Shown here: piece after piece, positions 13,861 through 59,319 of the stretch
Position numbering within the stretch: the first letter of the stretch is position 1
How the letters are laid out: every line of letters begins with the position of its first letter
Source of the DNA: Podarcis melisellensis
Taxonomy: Eukaryota
Length of the DNA stretch: 64,000 nt
Assembly (NCBI GenBank): GCA_964234715.1
Contig: OZ174276.1
Strand: one strand, 5' to 3'
Notes under the pieces: model-generated
Seen by the model: the letters and a program-made list of their open reading frames with translations, nothing else
Told to the model about the DNA's origin: nothing
Database searches by the model: none
Program-made: the position numbers and the translations under genes

Positions 13861-14291
13861 CAGATTGGAGAATTAGGTCCAAAACTAACAAAATGAATTT
13901 CAGTAGGGTCAAATGTAAAGTTGCACATTTAGGCAAGAAGAACCAGCTGCACAAATATTAGATGGAGGACACCTGGCATGGCAGTAGTACATGGGAAAAC
14001 GATCTAGAGGTCTTAGTAGACCACAAGCTTAACATGAATCAACAGTGTGATGCAGAAGCAAAAAAAGTTAATGCTTGCATCAGCAGAAGCATAGTGTCCA
14101 GATCAAGAGAAGTAACAGTACTACTCTACTCAGCTTTAATCAGACCATTTTATGGAGTACCTATGTCCAGTTCTGGGCACCACAATTGAAGAAGGATATT
14201 GACAAGCTGGAACATGTGCAGAGGAGGGCAACAAAGATGATCAAAGGTCTGGAAACCAAGCCTTATGATGAACAGTTGAGGGAACTGGGTA
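13861..14291 (+). mobile_element. CR1 LINE, 5' part of a 5'-truncated copy interrupted by Bov-B
   Basis: Decayed ORF2 motifs [55 protein letters not shown]. Confidence 0.93.
14198..14291 (+). repeat. 94-bp target-site duplication, left copy (right copy at 17518-17611)
   Basis: ATTGACAAGCTGG...GGAACTGGGTA is identical on both sides of the Bov-B. Confidence 0.95.
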
Positions 14292-14418
14292 CCCCTTCAT
14301 GGATCACTGCCTTGTTGTGGCGAAGGGGCTTGAAGAACTCAGAGAAGCTATGAACTATGCCGAGCAGGGCACCCAAGATGAACAGGTCATAGTGGAGAGT
14401 TTGACCAAACGTGATCCA
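14292..14418 (+). ncRNA. Candidate HDV-like self-cleaving ribozyme / structured 5' leader of Bov-B
   Basis: Helices in HDV order: P1 14292-98/14322-28, P2 14300-07/14411-18, P3 14309-11/14319-21, P4 14335-40/14397-402 plus 14348-53/14387-92. Confidence 0.5.
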
Positions 14419-17400
14419 CCTGGAGGAGGAACCGGCAAGCCACTCCAGTATCCCTGCCAAGAAAACTCCATGGACAAAGACAACAGGCATATAAAAGATA
14501 TGACGCTGGAAGATGAGCCCCTCAGGTCAGAAGGCGTCCAACATGCTACTGGGGAAGAGCGGAGGGCAAGTACAAGTAGATCCAGAGCTGATGAAGCGGC
14601 TAGGCCAAAGCCGAAAGGACGCTCAGTTGCGGATATGCCTGGAAGCGAAAGGAAAGTCCAATGCTGTAAAGAAAAATATTGCATAGGAACCTGGAATGTA
14701 AGAACCATGAACCTGGGTAAGTTGGAGGTGGTCAAAAATGAGATGGCAAGAATAAATATTGACATCCTGGGCATCAGTGAACTAAAATGGACGGGAATGG
14801 GTGAATTCAGTTCGGATGACCATCATATCTACTACTGTGGGCAAGAAACCCGTAAAAGAAATGGAGTGGCCCTCATAGTCAACAAAAGAGTGGCGAAAGC
14901 TGTACTGGGATGCAATCTCAAAAATGATAGAATGATCTCGATACGAATCCAAGGCAGACCTTTTAACATCACAGTAATCCAAGTTTATGCACCAACTACT
15001 TGTGCTGAAGAAACTGAAATTGACCAATTCTATGAAGACTTACAAGACCTTATAGAAGTGACACCAAAGAAGGATGTTCTTCTCATTATAGGGGATTGGA
15101 ATGCTAAAGTAGGGAGTCAAGAGATAAAAGGAACAACTGGCAAGTTTGGCCTTGGAGATCAAAATGAAGCAGGGCAAAGGCTAATAGAGTTCTGTCAAGA
15201 GAACAAGCTGGTCATCACAAACACGCTTTTCCAACAACACAAGAGATGACTCTACACATGGACATCATCAGATGGGCAGCATCGAAATCAGATTGATTAT
15301 ATACTCTGCAGCCAAAGATGGAGAAGCTCTATACAGTCAGCAAAAACAAGACCTGGAGCTGACTGTGGCTCAGATCATCAACTTCTTATAGCAAAATTCA
15401 AGCTTAAACTGAAGAAAGTAGGAAAACCACTGGGCCGGTAAGATACAATCTAAGTCAAATCCCTTATGAATACACAGTGGAAGTGAGGAACAGGTTTAAG
15501 GATTTAGATTTGGTGGACAGAATGCCTGAAGAACTATGGATGGAGGCTCGTAACATTATACAGGAGGCAGCAACGAAAACCATCCCAATGAAAAGGAAAT
15601 GCAAGAAAGCAAAGTGGCTGTCCAATGAGGCCTTACAAATAGCGGGGGAGAGAAGGCAAGCAAAATGCGAGGGAGATGGTGAAAGATACAGGAAATTGAA
15701 TGCAGATTTCCAAAGAATAGCAAGGAGAGACAAGAAGACCTTCTTAAACGAGCAATGCAAAGAAATAGAGGAAAGCAATAGAATGGGAAGAACCAGAGAT
15801 CTGTTCAAGAAAATTGGAGATATGAAAGGAACATTTCGTACAAAGATTTCCATAATAAAGGACAAAAGTGGAAAGGACCTAACAGAAGCAGAAGACATCA
15901 AGAAGAGGTGGCAAGAATACACAGAGGAATTATACCAGGAAGAAATGGATGTCTCATATACCCCAGGTAGTGTGGTTGCTGACCTCGAGCCAGACATCCT
16001 GGAAAGTGAAGTCAAATGGGCCTTAGAAAGCACTGCAAATAACAAGGCCAGTGGAAGTGATGGTATTCCAGCTGAACTATTTAAAATTTTAAAAGATGAT
16101 GCTGTTAAGGTGCTACACTCAATATGCCAGCAAGTTTGGAAAACTCAGCAGTGGCCAGAAGATTGGAGAAGATCAGTCTACATCCCAATCCCAAAGAAGG
16201 GCAGTGCCAAAGAATGCTCCAACTACCGCACAATTGCACTCATTTCACACGCTAGCAAGGTTATGCTTAAAATTCTACAAGGAAGGCTCAAGCAGTATGT
16301 GGACCGAGAACTCCCAGAAGTGCAAGCTGGATTTAGAAGAGGCAGAGGAACCAGAGACCAAATTGCAAACATGCGCTGGATTATGGAGAAAGCTAGAGAG
16401 TTCCAGAAAGACATCTACTTCTGCTTCATTGACTATGCAAAAGCCTTTGACTGTGTCGACCACGGCAAACTATGGCAAGTTCTTAAAGAAATGGGAGTGC
16501 CAGATCACCTCATCTGTCTCCTGAGAAATCTCTATGTGGGACAAGAAGCTACAGTTAGAACTGGATATGGAACAACTGATTGGTTCAAAATTGGGAAAGG
16601 AGTACGACAAGGCTGTATTTTGTCTCCCTGCTTATTTAACTTATATGCAGAATTCATCATGCGAAAGGCTGGGCTGGATGAATCCCTAGCTGGAATTAAG
16701 ATTGCCGGAAGAAATATCAACAACCTCAGATATGCAGATGACACAACCTTGATGGCAGAAAGTGAGGAGGAATTAAAGAACCTTTTAATGAGGGTGAAAG
16801 AGGAGAGCGCAAAATATGGTCTGAAGCTCAACATCAAAAAAACGAAGATCATGGCCACTGGTCCCATCACCACCTGGCAAATAGAAGGGGAAGAAATGGA
16901 GATAGTGAGAGATTTTACTTTCTTGGGCTCAATGATCACTGCAGATGGTGACAGCAGCCACGAAATTAAAAGACGCCTGCTTCTTGGGAGAAGGGCAATG
17001 ACAGGCCAAGACAGCATCTTGAGAAGTAGAGACATCACCTTACCAACAAAGGTTCGTATAGTTAAAGCTATGGTTTTCCCAGTAGTGATGTATGGAAGTG
17101 AGAGCTGGACCATAAAGAAGGCTGATCGCCGAAGAATTGATGCTTTTGAATTATGGTGCTGGAGGAGACTCTTGAGAGTCCCATGGACTGCAAGAAGATC
17201 AAACCTCTCCATACTGAAGGAAATCAACCCTGAGTGCTCACTGGAAGGACAGATTGTGAAGCTGAGGCTCCAGTACTTTGGCCACCTCATGAGAAGAGAA
17301 GACTCCCTGGAGAAGACCCTGATGTTGGGAAAGATGGAGGGCACAAGGAGAAGGGGACGGCATAGGACGAGATGGTTGGATAGTGTTTTCGAGGTTACCA

Positions 17401-17501
17401 GCATGAGTTTGACCAAACTGCGGGAGGCAGTGTAGGACAGAGGTGCCTGGCGTTCTCTGGTCCATGGGGTCACGAAGAGTCGGACACGACTAAACGACTA
17501 A
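14299..17501 (+). pseudogene. Bov-B EN-RT ORF with three lesions
   Basis: TGA at 15247-15249 (probable CGA>TGA). A 1-bp deletion in the A-run at about 15423-15426 shifts frame 1 to frame 3. TAG at 17433-17435, where the other two copies read GAA. The natural stop is TAA at 17499-17501. Confidence 0.9.
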
Positions 17502-17517
17502 ACAACAACAACAACAA

Positions 17518-17962
17518 ATTGACAAGCTGGAACATGTGCAGAGGAGGGCAACAAAGATGATCAAAGGTCTGGAAACCAAGCCTTATGATGAACAGTTGAG
17601 GGAACTGGGTATGTTTAGCCTGGATAAGAAAAGACTGAGAAGATATAAGATAGTCATCTTTAAATATCTGAAGAGCTGTCATCTGGAAAATGGAGCAAAC
17701 TTGTTTTCTCCTACTGCAGAGGAGAGGACCCAAACCAGTGGTCTTAAGTTACATGAAAGGAAATTCTGACTAAACATCAGGAATAACCTTTCATCAGTGG
17801 AACAGAGTCCCTCAGAAGGTGGTGGACTTACCTTCATTGGAGGTTTTTAAGCGAGGTTGGATGGCCATCTGTCACAGATGCTTTAGTTGAGATTCCTGCA
17901 TTGCAGGGGTTTGGTCTAGAGGACCCTCAGTGTCCCTTCCAACTCTAAAATTCTATGATTCT
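17518..17962 (+). mobile_element. CR1 LINE 3' part (continuation of 13861-14291)
   Basis: LRELGMFSLDKKRLRR...LKLHERKF, followed by the CR1 3' UTR and an ATTCTATGATTCT terminus. Confidence 0.95.
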
Positions 17963-40251: not shown

Positions 40252-40727
40252 TTGTTGTTCTTTAGTCGTTTAGTCATGTCCGACTCTTCATGACTCCTTG
40301 TAACCAGAGCACGCCCGGCACTCCTGTCTTCCACTGCCTCCCGCAGTGGGCTTTTCCAGGGAGTCTTCTCTTCTCATGAGGTGGGCAGAGTATTGGAGTC
40401 TCAGCTTCAGGATCTGTCCTTCCAGTGAGCACTCAGGGCTGATTTCCTTAAGGCTAGATAGGTTTGATCTTCTTGCAGTCCATGAGTCTCCTCCAGCACC
40501 ATAATTCAAAAGCATCAATTCTTTATGGTCCAGCTCTCACTTCCATACATCACTACTGGGAAAACCATGGCTTTAACTATATGGACCTTTGTTGGCAAGG
40601 TGATGTCTCTGCTTTTTAAGATGCTTTCTAGGATTGTTGTCATTTTTCTCCCAAGAAGCAGGCGTCTTTTAATTTTGTGACTGCTGTCATCACCTGCAGT
40701 GATCATGGAGCCCAAGAAAGTAAAATC
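40252..40727 (-). mobile_element. 5'-truncated Bov-B 3' fragment with internal deletions
   Basis: Homologous to 16911-17517 (GSMITA...SRDITLPTKV...MYGSESWTIK); (CAA)n tail at 40252. Confidence 0.95.
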
Positions 40728-43299
40728 ATTTAACTGCTTAGAACAGCAGAATTGGCAGTTCTACAGATGCCACATTATACCCGTTCCACTTTTGTAAGAA
40801 CTCAGTCATTTAGTGTGGCAGCACCTGCACTTTAGAACTCTCTGCCTGTTGAGATCAAGCAGATGCCTTCACTGTACTCCTATCCGTCACCTGCTAAAAA
40901 CATTCCTGTTTAGACAAGCCTACCCAGATGCTTAGAAAGTTGAGATTCTGTTTTAGTAGCATAACTTTTGCATGTTTTCCTGTATGGTTGTAATTTTTTC
41001 TTGATTTTACTGTTTTATCTTTTGTAAACTGCTTTGAGGGGGGGGATTTGCAATCAAGGGGTGTATAAATTTTATTAAATAAATGAATGAATGAAAACTC
41101 AGCATTTAAATGTAAACTTATAGGCCATCTATGCATATTTGCCATCAGCTGTAGTTTTAGAGTGTTGGCTGACGAAGTGAGTTGCCTCAGAATGAAGTGA
41201 GACGCAGAAAGAAAAATCCATACTTCTGTTGTTTTAGAGTTTGGGTACAATTCTAAAGATCAATTTTAATGTCTATGTCCAACCTAATGGGTAATCCTGA
41301 TTGTGTGTCAATAATTTTGTTATTTCACCGTATGTATTAATGACTTTTGTAAGCTGCTATCAGCTAGCATTCAAGACATTAATATTAGAAATAAATATAT
41401 AAAACAATTTCAGTTTTTTGGGTGAGACTGTGGATGACAGTGCATTTCAAAAAATCTGAAGGAGTTCTGATATTGGTTAAAGATTGCAACCCATGTAAAT
41501 TTTAGGAAATGTCCTAGTATATATTGTGTAATTCCCGTACAATTTGATGTTGAGATAAATGCTTGGGGAGAATCCCAAGACATTTATTTTCTGCATTTTA
41601 AAAGCTGGTAATCTGCTTTATAGAATATATGAAATATATTTCACTCGGAAAAGTTCAGAGACCTCAAACAGTATCATTGAATAGTCTGAGGCAAACACCT
41701 ATATTTTCACGAGCTGAATAATCATGCCAGAATATAATTGGAAACATAATTTTTCATTACTTTTGTAATATAATCTCTTCGTGCACTTGTGACCTCTGTG
41801 TCATGGTGATAATACTCCTGTTTCTTCAACGAGTAATTGAATAATGATGAAATTTTTGTTCCCCTCTAAGGTATTATAGTGCAGACTCAGTTATACAAAT
41901 GGAACAGGAATACAAGCTTTGCCTTTTTTAAAAAAAAAACTCCTGCAAAAGTACTGTACCTGACTGAGTTTAAATGGCAAGATTATTAATACTCCAACTC
42001 AAATTCACATTATGGCTCTTTTTCTAAGATAAGATGCAAGAATTCTGCAACAGGGGAGTGCTGCCTTAAAGCCTTACTAAATCTCCACATGCACCCCTTT
42101 TAAACCCCGACATTTAAGTACAATTAACACTAACAATGCTCTCTGCATTTTCCCTGGATGTGGCTTTCCCCTTTGTTTAATGACTTTCACTGAAAAGTTT
42201 ATATGACTGTTGAGATTTCCAGTGCACGAAAGCATCAGTTTGTAGTGGATTAAAAGATGTGAAAGGCAGTAAGAACTGCTGGGACTTAACAGTCCACAAA
42301 TTTATTTCTCTTCAGCCCACAGACATCCAATACATACATACTTACATACATATTTAAAATCTCATATTGTTATTTTTTGTAGTGCAACGAAAGTCATGGA
42401 AGTGTCAAATATATTAGGCACATTAGCCAGTTCTTACAGAACACTGCAATTTGGCTAACACAACTGGTTTTTAACATAGTTGTTTCTTTGAATAAACCTA
42501 ATCATTTAAACTAGCCTCGGGCATGAAATATAAAGGAAATGGCATATTTCCACCCCTGTACTGTAGCCAGGCATTAAGGTTCATGGAGAGTTGTTGGGCT
42601 AACATGGCAACATTAGTTTTGGGGTTGTTTTTTTTAAAGAAAACCTGTTTTGATCTCCAAATGAAGATAATTCTTATAATGCTGAGCTGCATAAGTACCC
42701 GGAGGAAGACCTGTTTCCTGGCTGCCTTTCATATGATCTTTATTGTATATCTATGATTGTGTCACCAGGCAGAATTTAGTAATACCATTGATTGTTCATG
42801 CTGGTGGAGAAATAGGAAAGGTGCTTTCATCTGTTAGGGGCTGGATGGAGCGAGCGAAGGTGAGGTACATTTCAAAATGTCTGAGGAGAGGAAAGAAGAA
42901 GCAAAGCAAGCAAATGAAAACCCACAAATACATATGAACACTGAGGAAATCTACCATATGCCTATGGGTGAAAGAGCTGTGGCTATTATCTGTGAAGGAG
43001 CTGTAGTTGTAAAGCATGTGATTTCTCTGTGGAGCTCGGTCTAAGGTTTAAGAAAGCTTGAGTAGGTCTGTTGATGGGATTAATGTGTGCACTTTAAAAT
43101 TCTGGTATTTGACTGACTGAACCATTGCTGTGCTTGAGAGTATTGCTTTACGGCAATTATTCATTTATTTATTTTTCTAAATTTGAGAATGAATTTGCAT
43201 ACACATGTAGATTATTTTCCTTTTGTAGTCAGAGATGCTATCCAGGTCACTGGAATTCCAGTGCAGATATAGTAATTAACAGAATATTATGTTAGGATC

Positions 43300-56103: not shown

Positions 56104-56340
56104 GGTTTTTTCTGTGGTATATAAAACATTTACATGGTTGTGTAAGGGACGAGCCGCATTGATTGCTTTTGGCATCAGTTCAAGTAAGAGTTGGTTGAGA
56201 TTTTTTAATGGCTATGGAAAAGTCATTGAGGCTGAAGAGAAGATGAGAAGTTTTAGGGTCAGCGCAGGGCAGACTGGGTTCCTTATGCCAGAATTGTACG
56301 TATTCTCCCTTTTAATCTTTGCCATGTTCTATAGTCTGGC

Positions 56341-57741
56341 ATGCCTGTTGCCTTTGTCCATGGAGTTTTCTTGGCAGGGATACTGGAGTGGCTTGCTGGT
56401 TCCTGCTCCAGGTGGATCACGTTTGGTCAAAACTCTCCACTATGACCTGTCCATCTTGGGTGGCTCTGCACAGCATAGCTCATAGCTTCTTTGAGTTATT
56501 CAAGCCCCTTCGCCACATCAAGGCAATGATCCATGAAGGATCCATGAAGTGATCCATGTGGACTGAGAACTCCCAGAAGTGCAAGCTGGATTTTAAAGGG
56601 GCAGAGGAACCAGAGACCAAATTGCAAACATGCACAGGATTATGGAGAAAGCTAGAGAGTTCCAGAAAAACATCTACTTCTGCTTCATTGATGCAAAAAC
56701 CTTTGACTATGTCGAACACAGCAAGCTATGGCATGTTCTTAAAGAAATGGGAGTGCCTGATCACCTCATCTGTCTCCTGAGAAATGTGTATGTGGGACAA
56801 GAAGATACAGTTAGAACTGGATATGGAATAACTGATTGGTTCAAAATTGGGAAAGGAGTATGACAAGGCTGTATATTGTCACCCTGCTTATTTAACTTAT
56901 AAGCGAAAGGCTGGACTGGATGAATCCCAAGCTGGAATTAAGATCACCGGAAGAAATATCAACAACCTCAGATATGCAGATTACACAACCTTGATGGCAG
57001 AAAGTGAGGAGGAATTAAAGAACCTTTTAATGAGGGTGAAAGAGGAGAGCGCAAAATATGGTCTGAAGTTCAACATCAAAAAAACGAAGATCATGGCCAC
57101 TGGTCCCATCAGCTCCTGGCAAATCTAAGGGGAAGAAATGGAGGTGGTGAAAGATTTTACTTTCTTGGGCTCCATGATCACTGCAGGTGGTTACAGTAGT
57201 CACAAAATTAAAAGACGCCTGCTTCTTGGGAGAAAAGTGACAACAAACCTAGAAAGCATCTTAAAAAGCAGAGACATCACCTTGCCAACAAAGGTCCGTA
57301 TAGTTAAAGCCATGGTTTTCCCAGTAGTGATGTATGGAAGTGAGAGCTGGACCATAAAGAAGGCTCGTCGCCAAAGAATTAATGCTTTTGAATTATGGTG
57401 CTGGAGGAAACTCTTGAGAGTCCCATTGACTGCAAGAAGATCAAACCTATCCATTCTGAAGGAAATCAGCCCTGAGTGCTCACTGGAAGGACAGATCCTG
57501 AAGCTAAGTCTCCAATACTTTGGCGACCTCATGAGAAGAGAAGACTCCCTGGAAAAGACCCTGATGTTGGGAAAGATTGAGGGCACAAAGAGAAGGGGAT
57601 GACAGAGGACAAGATGGTTGGACAGTGTTCTTGAAGCTACCAACATGAGTTTGACCAAACTGCAGGAGGCAGTGGAAGACGGGAGTGTCTGGCGTGCTCT
57701 GGTCCATGGGGTCACGTAGAGTCGGACACGACTAAACAAAA
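56341..57741 (+). mobile_element. Bov-B insertion with an inverted 5' segment (56341-56539, minus strand) joined to the 3' 1.2 kb (56556-57741, plus strand)
   Basis: The segments match 14294-14490 (reverse) and 16297-17495 (forward). 13-bp TSD ATAGTCTGGCATG at 56331-56343 and 57742-57754. Confidence 0.95.
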
Positions 57742-59319
57742 ATAGTCTGGCATGGCAGAGAAAGGTAGAAGCTTGAATGTCAGCAGAAAAATAAACTTCT
57801 TCAGAATATTCAGGAGTTTAATGCGTCTCTGGGCTGAAGCAACCCTTCATTGTATGAGGAGCCATTTAACACTCACAAAATTCCCAAGACCTCTGTACAG
57901 AGCTCTCCACTCTGGACAAGATTTCCGGTGAAAGCCAGAAACAATCAATGAGTAAGAAATGGAAGAAGGCAGCAATAAAGGGAATCATGGTGCTATCTTC
58001 CAGAAGGAATGACAATTTCTGCTGGATGTGAGGGAAAGATACACATTTAAAAGTTCATCATTGTATGTGCATTTAACTCTAGAAGGAAAACTGTGTCAGC
58101 ACAGCAAAATCTGTTCAATCAGTCTTTATGGTGTGCACCAAACAAAGAGAAATCTGTTGCATGACAACTCCACAGTACCATCTATTTCTTCATCTGCAGG
58201 TAAATTATTGGTGATGACTGAAAACTAATCAGCTGCCTTTTCATTTCATCAATAGGCCAAACCCTTGAATAGAGAGCAAGGTGCTGCTGACAGCCACTGT
58301 TTTTCCCACTGTGTAGCCTTGAATCACTGCAGCGCAGCCACTATGGTGATGAAAATTACAGGGGAAGAAATATCTGCTTGTGTTCCATTTCTAAAGGAAA
58401 GTGAAGGAGACGAAATGACATTTGTGAAAAGACACAAGCAGTACATGCCGTGTGCCTGGCTTGCCTGGCTTGATAGTACTATTGACATTGCCATTATAGC
58501 TAACAAGATACACACCAGAACTATAGAAATGTATGATTTGACAGAGTAGCTGTGAAGCAGCAAGCGCTGTCTTTCTGCCAGAGTCTCCTAATGGGATACT
58601 TGTTCCTAAAAATCAAGCAGTCTACCTGATTGCAGCCTGGCTGCTAGAAAAGCCCCAAGGTGCTTGTGGGTGGCCTGACTTTGAAGATAATTATTTAAGC
58701 AGAAAATGTGGATATGCAGTATTGTATTCTGAGGCTCTGCAGAAGCTTTACAACTGCAAAATGAAAAGATGCTTTGGAGAAAGGAGGGCTTTATATACAC
58801 CCAGGAACTTTTCCTAGTATGGTCTATTGATTTTATGATGAAAAAGAATTGCATCCATTTCCTTCCTGCAATAGAATTTGGAAGTAACCTGTTCATCATC
58901 TTGAAGGAATACATATTACAGATAGCACTTGCCCAGTTTGCAACTGGAAGTTTGGAATGCATCAATTTAATAGGTTTCCTAATTATGTCAGAGACCTTCA
59001 GGGCTTTAACTAGTCATATATGTATATGAAGCACAGTAGAATTATAAAAGCAGTAATTAATGATTAATAGTTGAACGCTATCTGATTTTTTTTTGTAACC
59101 ATCAATTGCACTGAATTATGAATAGATTAAATTTAGCTCTGAATTTTCTGGTCTGTCTTGGTTTCCTCCTGAAAACTCAGGTGGTGAACTTACTAGGATC
59201 TGGTAATGTTTCCAGGAAGTCACTCGACTTATTTCTGCTGCATTTACTCAGAACAGCCTGGGCCTAACATAGGCCATGTCTTGAGTTGATGTCAGTTGAT
59301 GTTGTCATCAACCTGTACC

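What the first reader, a model, noticed from the sequence alone, without database searches (positions are those of the whole stretch)
56331..57754. Twin-priming-type 5' inversion in an RTE/Bov-B element that reaches the extreme 5' end
Seen, inside one 13-bp TSD: element nt ~3-200 inverted, 16 nt of filler, then element nt ~2005 to the end in forward orientation, with about 1.8 kb missing. The last 3 nt of the left TSD (ATG) overlap the start of the inverted segment. The junction contains GATCCATG three times (56528, 56539, 56551). Known: this geometry defines twin priming in mammalian L1 and is much less documented for RTE-clade LINEs. Inference: the second target strand primed internally on a full-length Bov-B RNA and ran off its 5' end, and the two cDNAs were joined by templated end-joining. 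This independently maps the RNA 5' end to the P1 helix described above.
Basis: partly seen in the sequence, partly recalled or inferred. Interest (0 to 1): 0.72.

Follow-up and report, generated by a model that had tools for sequence, protein, structure and literature searches.

The report
Bov-B insertion with flipped front end
One dead copy of a lizard jumping gene (Bov-B) went in with its first 200 bases flipped and 1.8 kb missing, the scar expected when both cut DNA ends prime copying of the RNA ("twin priming"); this is well known for mammalian L1, and I found no report of it for this family.

Summary
A perfect 13-bp target-site duplication (56331-56343 and 57742-57754) encloses three pieces. 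The first is Bov-B nt 3-199 in reverse orientation (56341-56539). The second is 16 nt (56540-55). The third is Bov-B nt 2006 to the 3' tail, forward (56556-57741). About 1.8 kb is missing.

The target carries the published Bov-B endonuclease signature (TTT about 11 nt upstream, T|A at the nick). ATG microhomology sits at both internal joints. Both segments belong to the same subfamily. Short-read contigs of three to four related lizard species carry the same flank-to-element joints, so the insertion is real, old and shared. No empty site could be obtained.

Best reading (about 0.78) is a twin-priming-type insertion whose second cDNA reached the canonical RNA 5' end.

- The 16-nt "filler" is not a random end-joining patch. 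The same 5' extension heads an ordinary, un-inverted full-length copy of another subfamily in published Podarcis muralis data. It therefore comes from reverse-transcriptase stutter at the RNA end, or from a 5'-extended RNA.
- The 1.8-kb gap is far larger than typical L1 twin-priming gaps.

The scan has flagged similar inversions elsewhere in this genome. This is a new member of a known kind, of modest interest.

The parts
56318..56330 (+). Target-site signature upstream of the first-strand nick: TTT at 56318-56320 (-13 to -11) and T at 56330 just before the A that starts the TSD
   Evidence: Sequence. It matches the 'Tn-TA' signature published for squamate Bov-B: TSD starts with A, is preceded by T, and has TTT about one helical turn upstream (PMC13295347).
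56331..56343 (.). Left copy of the 13-bp target-site duplication ATAGTCTGGCATG
   Evidence: Identical to 57742-57754. Contigs of organisms A, D and F run from the unique left flank through it into the inverted segment (records 1, 16, 9).
56341..56343 (.). ATG microhomology shared by the 3' end of the left TSD (the proposed second primer) and the inverted element at nt 197-199
   Evidence: Alignment A1. The canonical continuation ...CTTTTAT|ATGCC is seen in 44 other copies (loose ends).
56341..56539 (-). Inverted 5' segment: Bov-B nt 3-199 including most of the 5' ribozyme-like fold region; 'B-type' subfamily
   Evidence: blastn 93.0% to 14490..14294, alignment A1. B-type diagnostic strings are shared with published P. 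muralis copies chr4:24323580 and chr2:c67518780.
56540..56555 (-). 16-nt 5' extension ('filler'): re-copies of element nt 13-4 (ATCCATGAAG) and nt 15-10 (TGATCC) on the + strand
   Evidence: The same extension sits at the 5' end of un-inverted copy PodMur_1.0 chr1:1315843-1319466. It occurs once in about 104 records.
56556..56558 (.). ATG shared by the third GATCCATG repeat and the start of the forward segment (inversion-junction microhomology)
   Evidence: Alignment A2. Canonical copies diverge exactly before 56556 (loose ends in X20).
56556..57741 (+). Forward 3' segment: Bov-B nt 2006 to the 3' end with a short tail (…GACACGACTAAACAAAA); reading frame broken (5 or more stops in every frame, 15-nt deletion after 56901)
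   Evidence: blastn 90.7% to 16297-17495, (stops; loose end at 56901). B-type at 56868-56905 and 57620-57690 by comparison.
57742..57754 (.). Right copy of the 13-bp target-site duplication
   Evidence: Contigs of organisms A, D, E and F run from the element 3' end (22-47 nt) through it into the unique right flank (records 8, 22, 30, 14).
14292..17517 (+). Comparator only: full-length 'A-type' Bov-B copy used as coordinate reference (starts CCCCTTCATGG, ends (CAA)n, 94-bp TSD)
   Evidence: ORF pieces are 94-97% identical to P. muralis Bov-B proteins with PF03372, PF14529 and PF00078.

Best explanation
This is a single Bov-B (RTE-clade LINE) retrotransposition event of the twin-priming type. 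The Bov-B endonuclease nicked the bottom strand at T|A. That 3' end primed reverse transcription at the RNA 3' tail, and the first cDNA stopped at nt 2006. The top strand was cut 13 nt downstream. Its freed 3' end (…GGCATG) annealed through ATG to the same, or a sister, Bov-B RNA at nt 197-199 and primed a second cDNA. That second cDNA ran to the canonical 5' end (nt 3) and then re-copied the terminal 12-mer about one and a half more times. The two cDNA 3' ends annealed through ATG/CAT and were filled in. The result has the 5' 200 nt inverted, 1.8 kb of RNA sequence uncopied and a 13-bp TSD. What is shown: the geometry, the TSD, the endonuclease signature, both microhomologies, the shared subfamily of the two segments, and the presence of both outer joints in several species. 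What is inferred: the order of events, that one RNA served both primers, and that the 16-nt extension was made by the reverse transcriptase.
For: The geometry and the perfect 13-bp TSD are confirmed. The TSD length and the TTT…T|A target signature fit published squamate Bov-B insertions (PMC13295347), and the RTE-clade TSD peak is 10-12 bp (PMC4245944). A 5'-only fragment lacking a 3' tail cannot insert alone by target-primed reverse transcription, so the inverted piece must belong to the same event as the 3' piece.

The 5' junction has a 3-nt microhomology, as in 95% of 5'-inverted L1 copies, about 70% of which have 2-5 bp (PMC2912911). The inversion junction also has a 3-nt microhomology.

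The inverted piece ends at nt 3 of the canonical start. That start directly follows the TSD in the five published P. muralis copies read. Across about 104 records, 61 contain the exact CCCCTTCATGGATCA and 94 contain CCTTCATGGATCA.

Both pieces are B-type and equally diverged from the A-type reference (6.1% against 8.0%, Fisher p=0.47). Independent short-read contigs of organisms A, D and F link the left flank to the inverted sequence. Contigs of A, D, E and F link the 3' end to the right flank. The Yamaguchi model says 5' inversion needs an overhang of at least about 10 nt (PMC4245944), and 13 nt here satisfies it.
Against: No empty orthologous site was obtained. Every organism laid carries the insertion, so an un-inverted ancestor at this site is not formally excluded.

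The internal gap (about 1806 nt) is two orders of magnitude larger than typical L1 twin-priming deletions (median 14.5 bp; bioRxiv 10.1101/2024.08.27.596794).

No independent contig listed bridges the internal junction 56540-56556. That junction rests on the assembly alone.

The left-junction contigs enter the element by only 21-30 nt, under the tool's 31-letter bridging rule. This is a limit of k=31 unitigs that end in a repeat.
Confidence: 0.78

Rival explanations
1. Twin priming in trans. The geometry is the same, but the top-strand primer copied the 5' end of a second Bov-B RNA molecule rather than the RNA being copied from its 3' tail.
For: The 1.8-kb gap between the two cDNAs is far beyond typical L1 same-template gaps. 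Bov-B RNA would be abundant in a cell where the element is active.
Against: Both segments are of the same B-type subfamily and of similar divergence. That is what one template predicts, although it does not exclude two RNAs from one subfamily.
Confidence: 0.1
2. Post-insertion rearrangement. A normal full-length Bov-B inserted first, and later breakage or replication template-switching inverted nt 1-199 and deleted nt 200-2005.
For: No empty or ancestral-state site could be examined. Templated short insertions also occur in repair-based rearrangements.
Against: It needs three breakpoints, one falling within 3 nt of the element's 5' terminus and of the TSD boundary. That is roughly 6 in 3200 for a random break. 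It does not explain why the 16-nt extension equals the 5' extension of an ordinary insertion elsewhere. The structure is already fixed in at least three species with identical outer joints.
Confidence: 0.07
3. Retrotransposition of an already rearranged source element, or an assembly artefact.
For: The internal junction was not independently bridged in the contigs listed.
Against: A rearranged source would leave sister copies sharing the junction. At 56556 and 56341 the other copies seen all continue canonically. Outer joints with opposite element orientations are present in short-read contigs of several organisms, which an assembly error in one genome cannot produce.
Confidence: 0.05

Closest known systems
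Twin-priming 5' inversions of mammalian LINE-1 (Ostertag and Kazazian 2001; statistics in Kojima 2010, PMC2912911)
   Same: One element-typical TSD encloses an inverted 5' piece and a forward 3' piece with the 3' tail. The inverted piece lies upstream of the forward piece in element coordinates. There is a 2-5 nt microhomology between the TSD end and the inverted piece, and a microhomology at the inversion junction.
   Different: The element belongs to a different LINE clade: RTE/Bov-B, with a single ORF, no poly(A), and a microsatellite-like tail. The junction gap is about 1.8 kb against a median of 14.5 bp in L1. The inverted cDNA reaches the RNA 5' end, whereas L1 inversions are usually also 5'-truncated. 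A templated 16-nt terminal re-copy is present, whereas extra nucleotides are rare in inverted L1 (3.9% at the 5' junction).
Ordinary full-length squamate Bov-B insertions (PMC13295347)
   Same: The TSD is about 12-13 nt, starts with A after T, and has TTT about 11 nt upstream. The 5' terminus is CCCCTTCATGG and the 3' end is …GACACGACTAAAC. One published copy (PodMur_1.0 chr1:1315843-1319466) carries the same 5' terminal re-copy.
   Different: Here the 5' 200 nt are inverted and attached to the opposite side of the target, and 56% of the element is missing.
Template switching or jumping of non-LTR reverse transcriptases at the RNA 5' end (for example U6 chimeras of RTE-like elements in Anolis, PMC4476161)
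   Same: Extra sequence is added after the RT reaches the 5' end of its template. RTE-type RTs are documented to do this.
   Different: Here the added sequence is a re-copy of the element's own terminal 12-mer from an internal position, not another RNA copied from its 3' end.

Membership tests
Twin-priming-type 5'-inverted LINE insertion | A single TSD of element-typical length encloses the whole composite | tested here: met
   Perfect 13-bp repeat at 56331-43 and 57742-54. The RTE peak is 10-12 bp, and squamate Bov-B TSDs are about 12 nt.
Twin-priming-type 5'-inverted LINE insertion | The forward 3' piece ends in the element's 3' tail at the right TSD, at an endonuclease-type target | tested here: met
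   …GACACGACTAAACAAAA|ATAG…. The TTT…T|A signature is present.
Twin-priming-type 5'-inverted LINE insertion | The inverted piece abuts the left TSD with its internal end and comes from RNA sequence 5' of the forward piece | tested here: met
   nt 199 lies next to the TSD and nt 3 at the junction. The forward piece starts at nt 2006.
Twin-priming-type 5'-inverted LINE insertion | Microhomology between the 3' end of the left TSD and the internal priming site | tested here: met
   ATG, 3 nt. A chance overlap of 3 nt or more has probability about 1/64.
Twin-priming-type 5'-inverted LINE insertion | Small deletion or duplication, with microhomology, at the inversion junction | tested here: inconclusive
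   The ATG microhomology is present, but the deletion is about 1806 nt against an L1 median of 14.5 bp.
Twin-priming-type 5'-inverted LINE insertion | Both pieces derive from one template (same subfamily and age) | tested here: met
   Both are B-type by diagnostic strings. Mismatch to the reference is 6.1% against 8.0%, p=0.47. Same subfamily does not prove the same molecule.
Twin-priming-type 5'-inverted LINE insertion | The pre-insertion (empty) site has one copy of the TSD and there is no un-inverted intermediate | not testable with these tools
   All four organisms laid (A, D, E, F) carry the insertion.
RTE-clade Bov-B LINE | Homology to the Bov-B EN-RT ORF and to the Bov-B 3' end | tested here: met
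   90.7-93% DNA identity to the window's full-length copy. That copy's ORF is 94-97% identical to P. muralis proteins with PF03372, PF14529 and PF00078, and 75-79% identical to bovine Bov-B RT.
   No Rfam hit at E<=10 on 14100-14700 or 56200-57900. Only the P1 pairing CCCCTTC/GAAGGGG was seen by eye. Cleavage was not tested. This is not needed for the inversion reading.

The most novel reading that the evidence does not exclude
The Bov-B reverse transcriptase, on reaching the 5' end of its RNA, re-copies the terminal 12-mer (nt 4-15) in a reproducible two-step stutter. The same 16-17-nt product appears on a cDNA primed from the top strand (this inversion) and on an ordinary bottom-strand-primed full-length copy of another subfamily in P. 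muralis. If so, it is a signature of true run-off at the RNA terminus. Together with the 13-nt overhang, this would make RTE-clade elements a second natural system for twin priming, as the overhang-length model predicts.
Probability: 0.3. Interest if true: 0.55.

Novelty: new member of a known kind. Interest (0 to 1): 0.4.

Why it matters
Twin priming has been documented almost only for L1. In cell-culture assays 5' inversions appeared only with human L1, plus one Nimb-2_DR insert, and were proposed to need a target overhang of at least about 10 nt (PMC4245944). A clean Bov-B case with a 13-nt TSD fits that prediction and extends the mechanism to the RTE clade.

The inverted cDNA ends at the same terminus as ordinary full-length copies. 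It also carries the same terminal re-copy as one of them. This suggests that the terminus and the stutter are properties of the RNA and reverse transcriptase, not of the 5' joining step. The practical value is modest. It is one old, dead copy, and the scan has flagged several similar candidates in this genome, so a genome-wide census would be the real result.

Tried and rejected
- **Rfam scans:** I scanned the inverted 5' end and the reference 5' end for HDV-like ribozymes and found no hits.
- **Empty site:** One run search and one read-laying run covered four organisms, and all carry the filled site.
- **Family 5' terminus from loose ends:** I tried to map it from contig loose ends at 56539/56540, but those rows were not among the ones shown.
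- **Podarcis Bov-B DNA through proteins:** The best hits are UniRef-only, with no contigs on record, so no loci were fetched. The published supplement of PMC13295347 served instead.
- **Numerical comparison with published copies:** That step was left out. Subfamily assignment rests on short diagnostic strings read by eye.
- **Ostertag and Kazazian 2001:** The paper is not held.
- **Snap-back (hairpin) priming:** Rejected, because the inverted piece is not the complement of sequence adjacent to the junction.
- **Two independent insertions:** Rejected, because a tail-less 5' fragment cannot insert by target-primed reverse transcription and there is only one TSD.

Full report
**Observation**

The region was read and compared with the whole window by blastn.
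- 56341-56539 is the reverse complement of 14294-14490, that is nt 3-199 of the full-length Bov-B copy at 14292-17517 (93.0% identity).
- 56556-57737 is colinear with 16297-17495, nt 2006 to the 3' end (90.7%).
- The 13-mer ATAGTCTGGCATG stands at 56331-56343 and 57742-57754, and the repeat does not extend on either side. The chance of this within +/-10 nt of both ends is about 7e-6.
- Sixteen bases (56540-56555) lie between the two pieces, and GATCCATG starts at 56528, 56539 and 56551.

**Identity of the element**

The reference copy's ORF pieces are 94-97% identical to Podarcis muralis proteins carrying endonuclease and reverse-transcriptase domains. They are 75-79% identical to bovine Bov-B RT.

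A 2026 paper on squamate Bov-B insertion signatures (PMC13295347) reports three things:
- TSDs start with A preceded by T.
- TTT lies about one helical turn upstream.
- The full-length element begins with a C stretch about 12 nt after the TSD start.

The site here reads …cTTTgccatgttcT|ATAGTCTGGCATG, with TTT at -13 to -11. This is a typical Bov-B endonuclease target, with a TSD of typical length.

**The family's 5' end**

The paper's supplement lists P. muralis full-length copies with their TSDs. In the five copies I read:
- two start CCCCTTCATGGATCA directly after the TSD;
- one starts CCTCTTCATGG directly after it;
- one has a few extra bases before CCTTCATGG;
- one carries the extension described under "The filler".

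In about 104 held records, the exact CCCCTTCATGGATCA occurs 61 times and CCTTCATGGATCA occurs 94 times. The window's own copy starts the same way after its TSD. The inverted segment here ends …CCTTCATGGATCA (sense), which is nt 3 of that terminus. So "reaches the extreme 5' end" is justified to within 2 nt.

**The joints**

At the left joint, the TSD's last three bases (ATG) are also element nt 199-197 in reverse. In one run, 44 other copies continue with …CTTTTAT before ATGCC, so the overlap is exactly 3 nt. At the inner joint, other copies read …GGCTTAAGCAGT before ATGTGG. The forward piece therefore starts at 56556, and its ATG is shared with the third GATCCATG repeat.

In human and chimpanzee L1, 95% of 5'-inverted copies show microhomology at the 5' junction, mostly 2-5 bp, and their TSDs are full-sized (PMC2912911). 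This locus behaves the same way.

**One template?**

The window's reference copy is of one subfamily ("A-type"; for example …GAAGAACTCAGAGAAGCTATGAACTATGCCGAGCAGGGCAC…). The inverted piece has the alternative "B-type" states (GAATAAC, ATGAGCTATGC, GTGCAG, GCCACCC, GATGGACAGG). These are shared with published copies chr4:24323580 and chr2:c67518780.

The forward piece is also B-type where those copies differ from A-type:
- TATATTGTC…AACTTAT at 56868-56905;
- TTCTTGAAGCTACCAACATGAG and GGAAGAC.GGAGTG at 57620-57690.

Mismatch rates to the A-type reference are 6.1% for the inverted piece and 8.0% for the forward piece (Fisher p=0.47). Both pieces therefore fit one subfamily and one age. This comparison was made by eye on short diagnostic strings.

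**Presence in other genomes**

The run search found holders from at least six coded organisms. I laid the contigs of four.
- Left joint: contigs of A (0 mismatches), D and F run from the unique left flank through the TSD and 21-30 nt into the inverted sequence.
- Right joint: contigs of A, D, E and F run from 22-47 nt of the element's 3' end through the TSD into the unique right flank.
- Flank divergence is about 1-3.5%.

The left-side overlaps are below the tool's 31-letter bridging rule. That is the maximum a k=31 unitig can carry into a repeat, so I treat them as supportive rather than formal bridges. No empty site appeared, and no listed contig bridged the inner junction. The insertion is therefore real and predates the split of these species. 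The decisive empty-site test remains undone.

**The filler**

In the sense of the inverted piece, the junction reads CAT-GGATCA-CTTCATGGAT-CCTTCATGGATCA….

The published copy PodMur_1.0 chr1:1315843-1319466 is ordinary, un-inverted and full-length, with TSD ATAGAGCTGCTTCA. It reads TGGATCA-CTTCATGGAT-CCCTTCATGGATCA… directly after its TSD. This is the same two-step re-copy of nt 4-15, differing by one C. Its first unit is completed by 5 nt of target microhomology. That copy is A-type and ours is B-type, so a single source lineage is unlikely. It is the only such case in about 104 records.

The extension is therefore not an arbitrary end-joining patch. Either the Bov-B RT stutters reproducibly at the RNA 5' end, or rare RNAs carry a tandemly extended 5' end. 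RTE-type RTs are known to switch templates at the RNA 5' end in Anolis (U6 chimeras; PMC4476161). I favour RT stutter, but I cannot separate the two.

**Mechanism and its weak point**

The best explanation is twin priming, with these steps:
1. The bottom-strand nick primes at the 3' tail.
2. The top-strand 3' end (…CATG) primes at nt 197-199.
3. The second cDNA runs off the 5' end.
4. The two cDNA ends anneal by ATG/CAT.

The atypical feature is the 1806-nt gap. In 1,703 L1 inversions from tumours, internal deletions had a median of 14.5 bp (bioRxiv 10.1101/2024.08.27.596794). The gap could mean an early stall of the first cDNA, or priming on a second RNA molecule.

A post-insertion inversion plus deletion would need three breaks, one coinciding with the element terminus, and it would not explain the shared extension. 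I give it about 0.07.

**Literature**

In 8.4 million full texts, 11 papers hold both "twin priming" and "RTE". Of those, I opened five, and none reports an RTE or Bov-B inversion. The 2026 Bov-B signature paper does not mention inversions. In retrotransposition assays, 5' inversions arose only with human L1 in human cells, plus one Nimb-2_DR insert. The authors proposed that short overhangs cannot prime (PMC4245944). The RTE clade, with 10-13-nt TSDs, meets their requirement, and this locus fits that prediction.

**Earlier notes of this scan**

The scan lists other candidate twin-priming inversions of Bov-B, RTE and Sauria SINE copies elsewhere in this genome. I did not check them. They suggest the phenomenon is recurrent here, and this is not the first sighting by the scan.

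**Verdict**

The twin-priming reading is the best supported at about 0.78, with the corrections on the filler and the gap size. It is a new member of a known kind, with interest 0.4.

Noticed in passing
window 14198-14291 and 17518-17611: The full-length Bov-B copy used as reference is flanked by a perfect 94-bp direct repeat. The repeat lies inside a CR1/L2-like LINE 3' region and is far longer than the usual ~12-bp Bov-B TSD. An earlier scan note (s1-505140) also flagged it.
   Followed up: partly
published P. muralis copy PodMur_1.0 chr1:1315843-1319466 (PMC13295347 FigS6) and window 56540-56555: The same 16-17-nt re-copy of element nt 4-15 occurs at the 5' end of two independent Bov-B insertions of different subfamilies, one inverted and one ordinary. 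This suggests reproducible stutter of the reverse transcriptase at the RNA 5' end, or a rare 5'-extended RNA.
   Followed up: partly
window 57725-57741: The 3' tail of this copy is shortened. Canonical copies read GACACGACTAAACGACTAAACAACAAC…, whereas this one reads GACACGACTAAACAAAA. One GACTAAAC unit and the (CAA)n run are missing, as if reverse transcription started at the upstream unit.
   Followed up: no
window 56901: There is a 15-nt deletion relative to other copies, which continue with TGCAGAATTCATCAT before GCGAAAGG. Every frame of the forward piece has 5 or more stops, so the copy is dead.
   Followed up: no
window 14299-14500: In the A-type reference copy an ATG at element nt 8 opens a frame that runs through the ribozyme-like 5' region into the annotated ORF start (MDKDNRHIK…). 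In B-type copies the same frame is closed by TAA (GAATAAC). The two subfamilies therefore differ in whether the 5' fold region is coding.
   Followed up: no
window 40268-40730: A further 5'-truncated Bov-B 3' fragment lies on the minus strand (86-88% identical to this copy).
   Followed up: no
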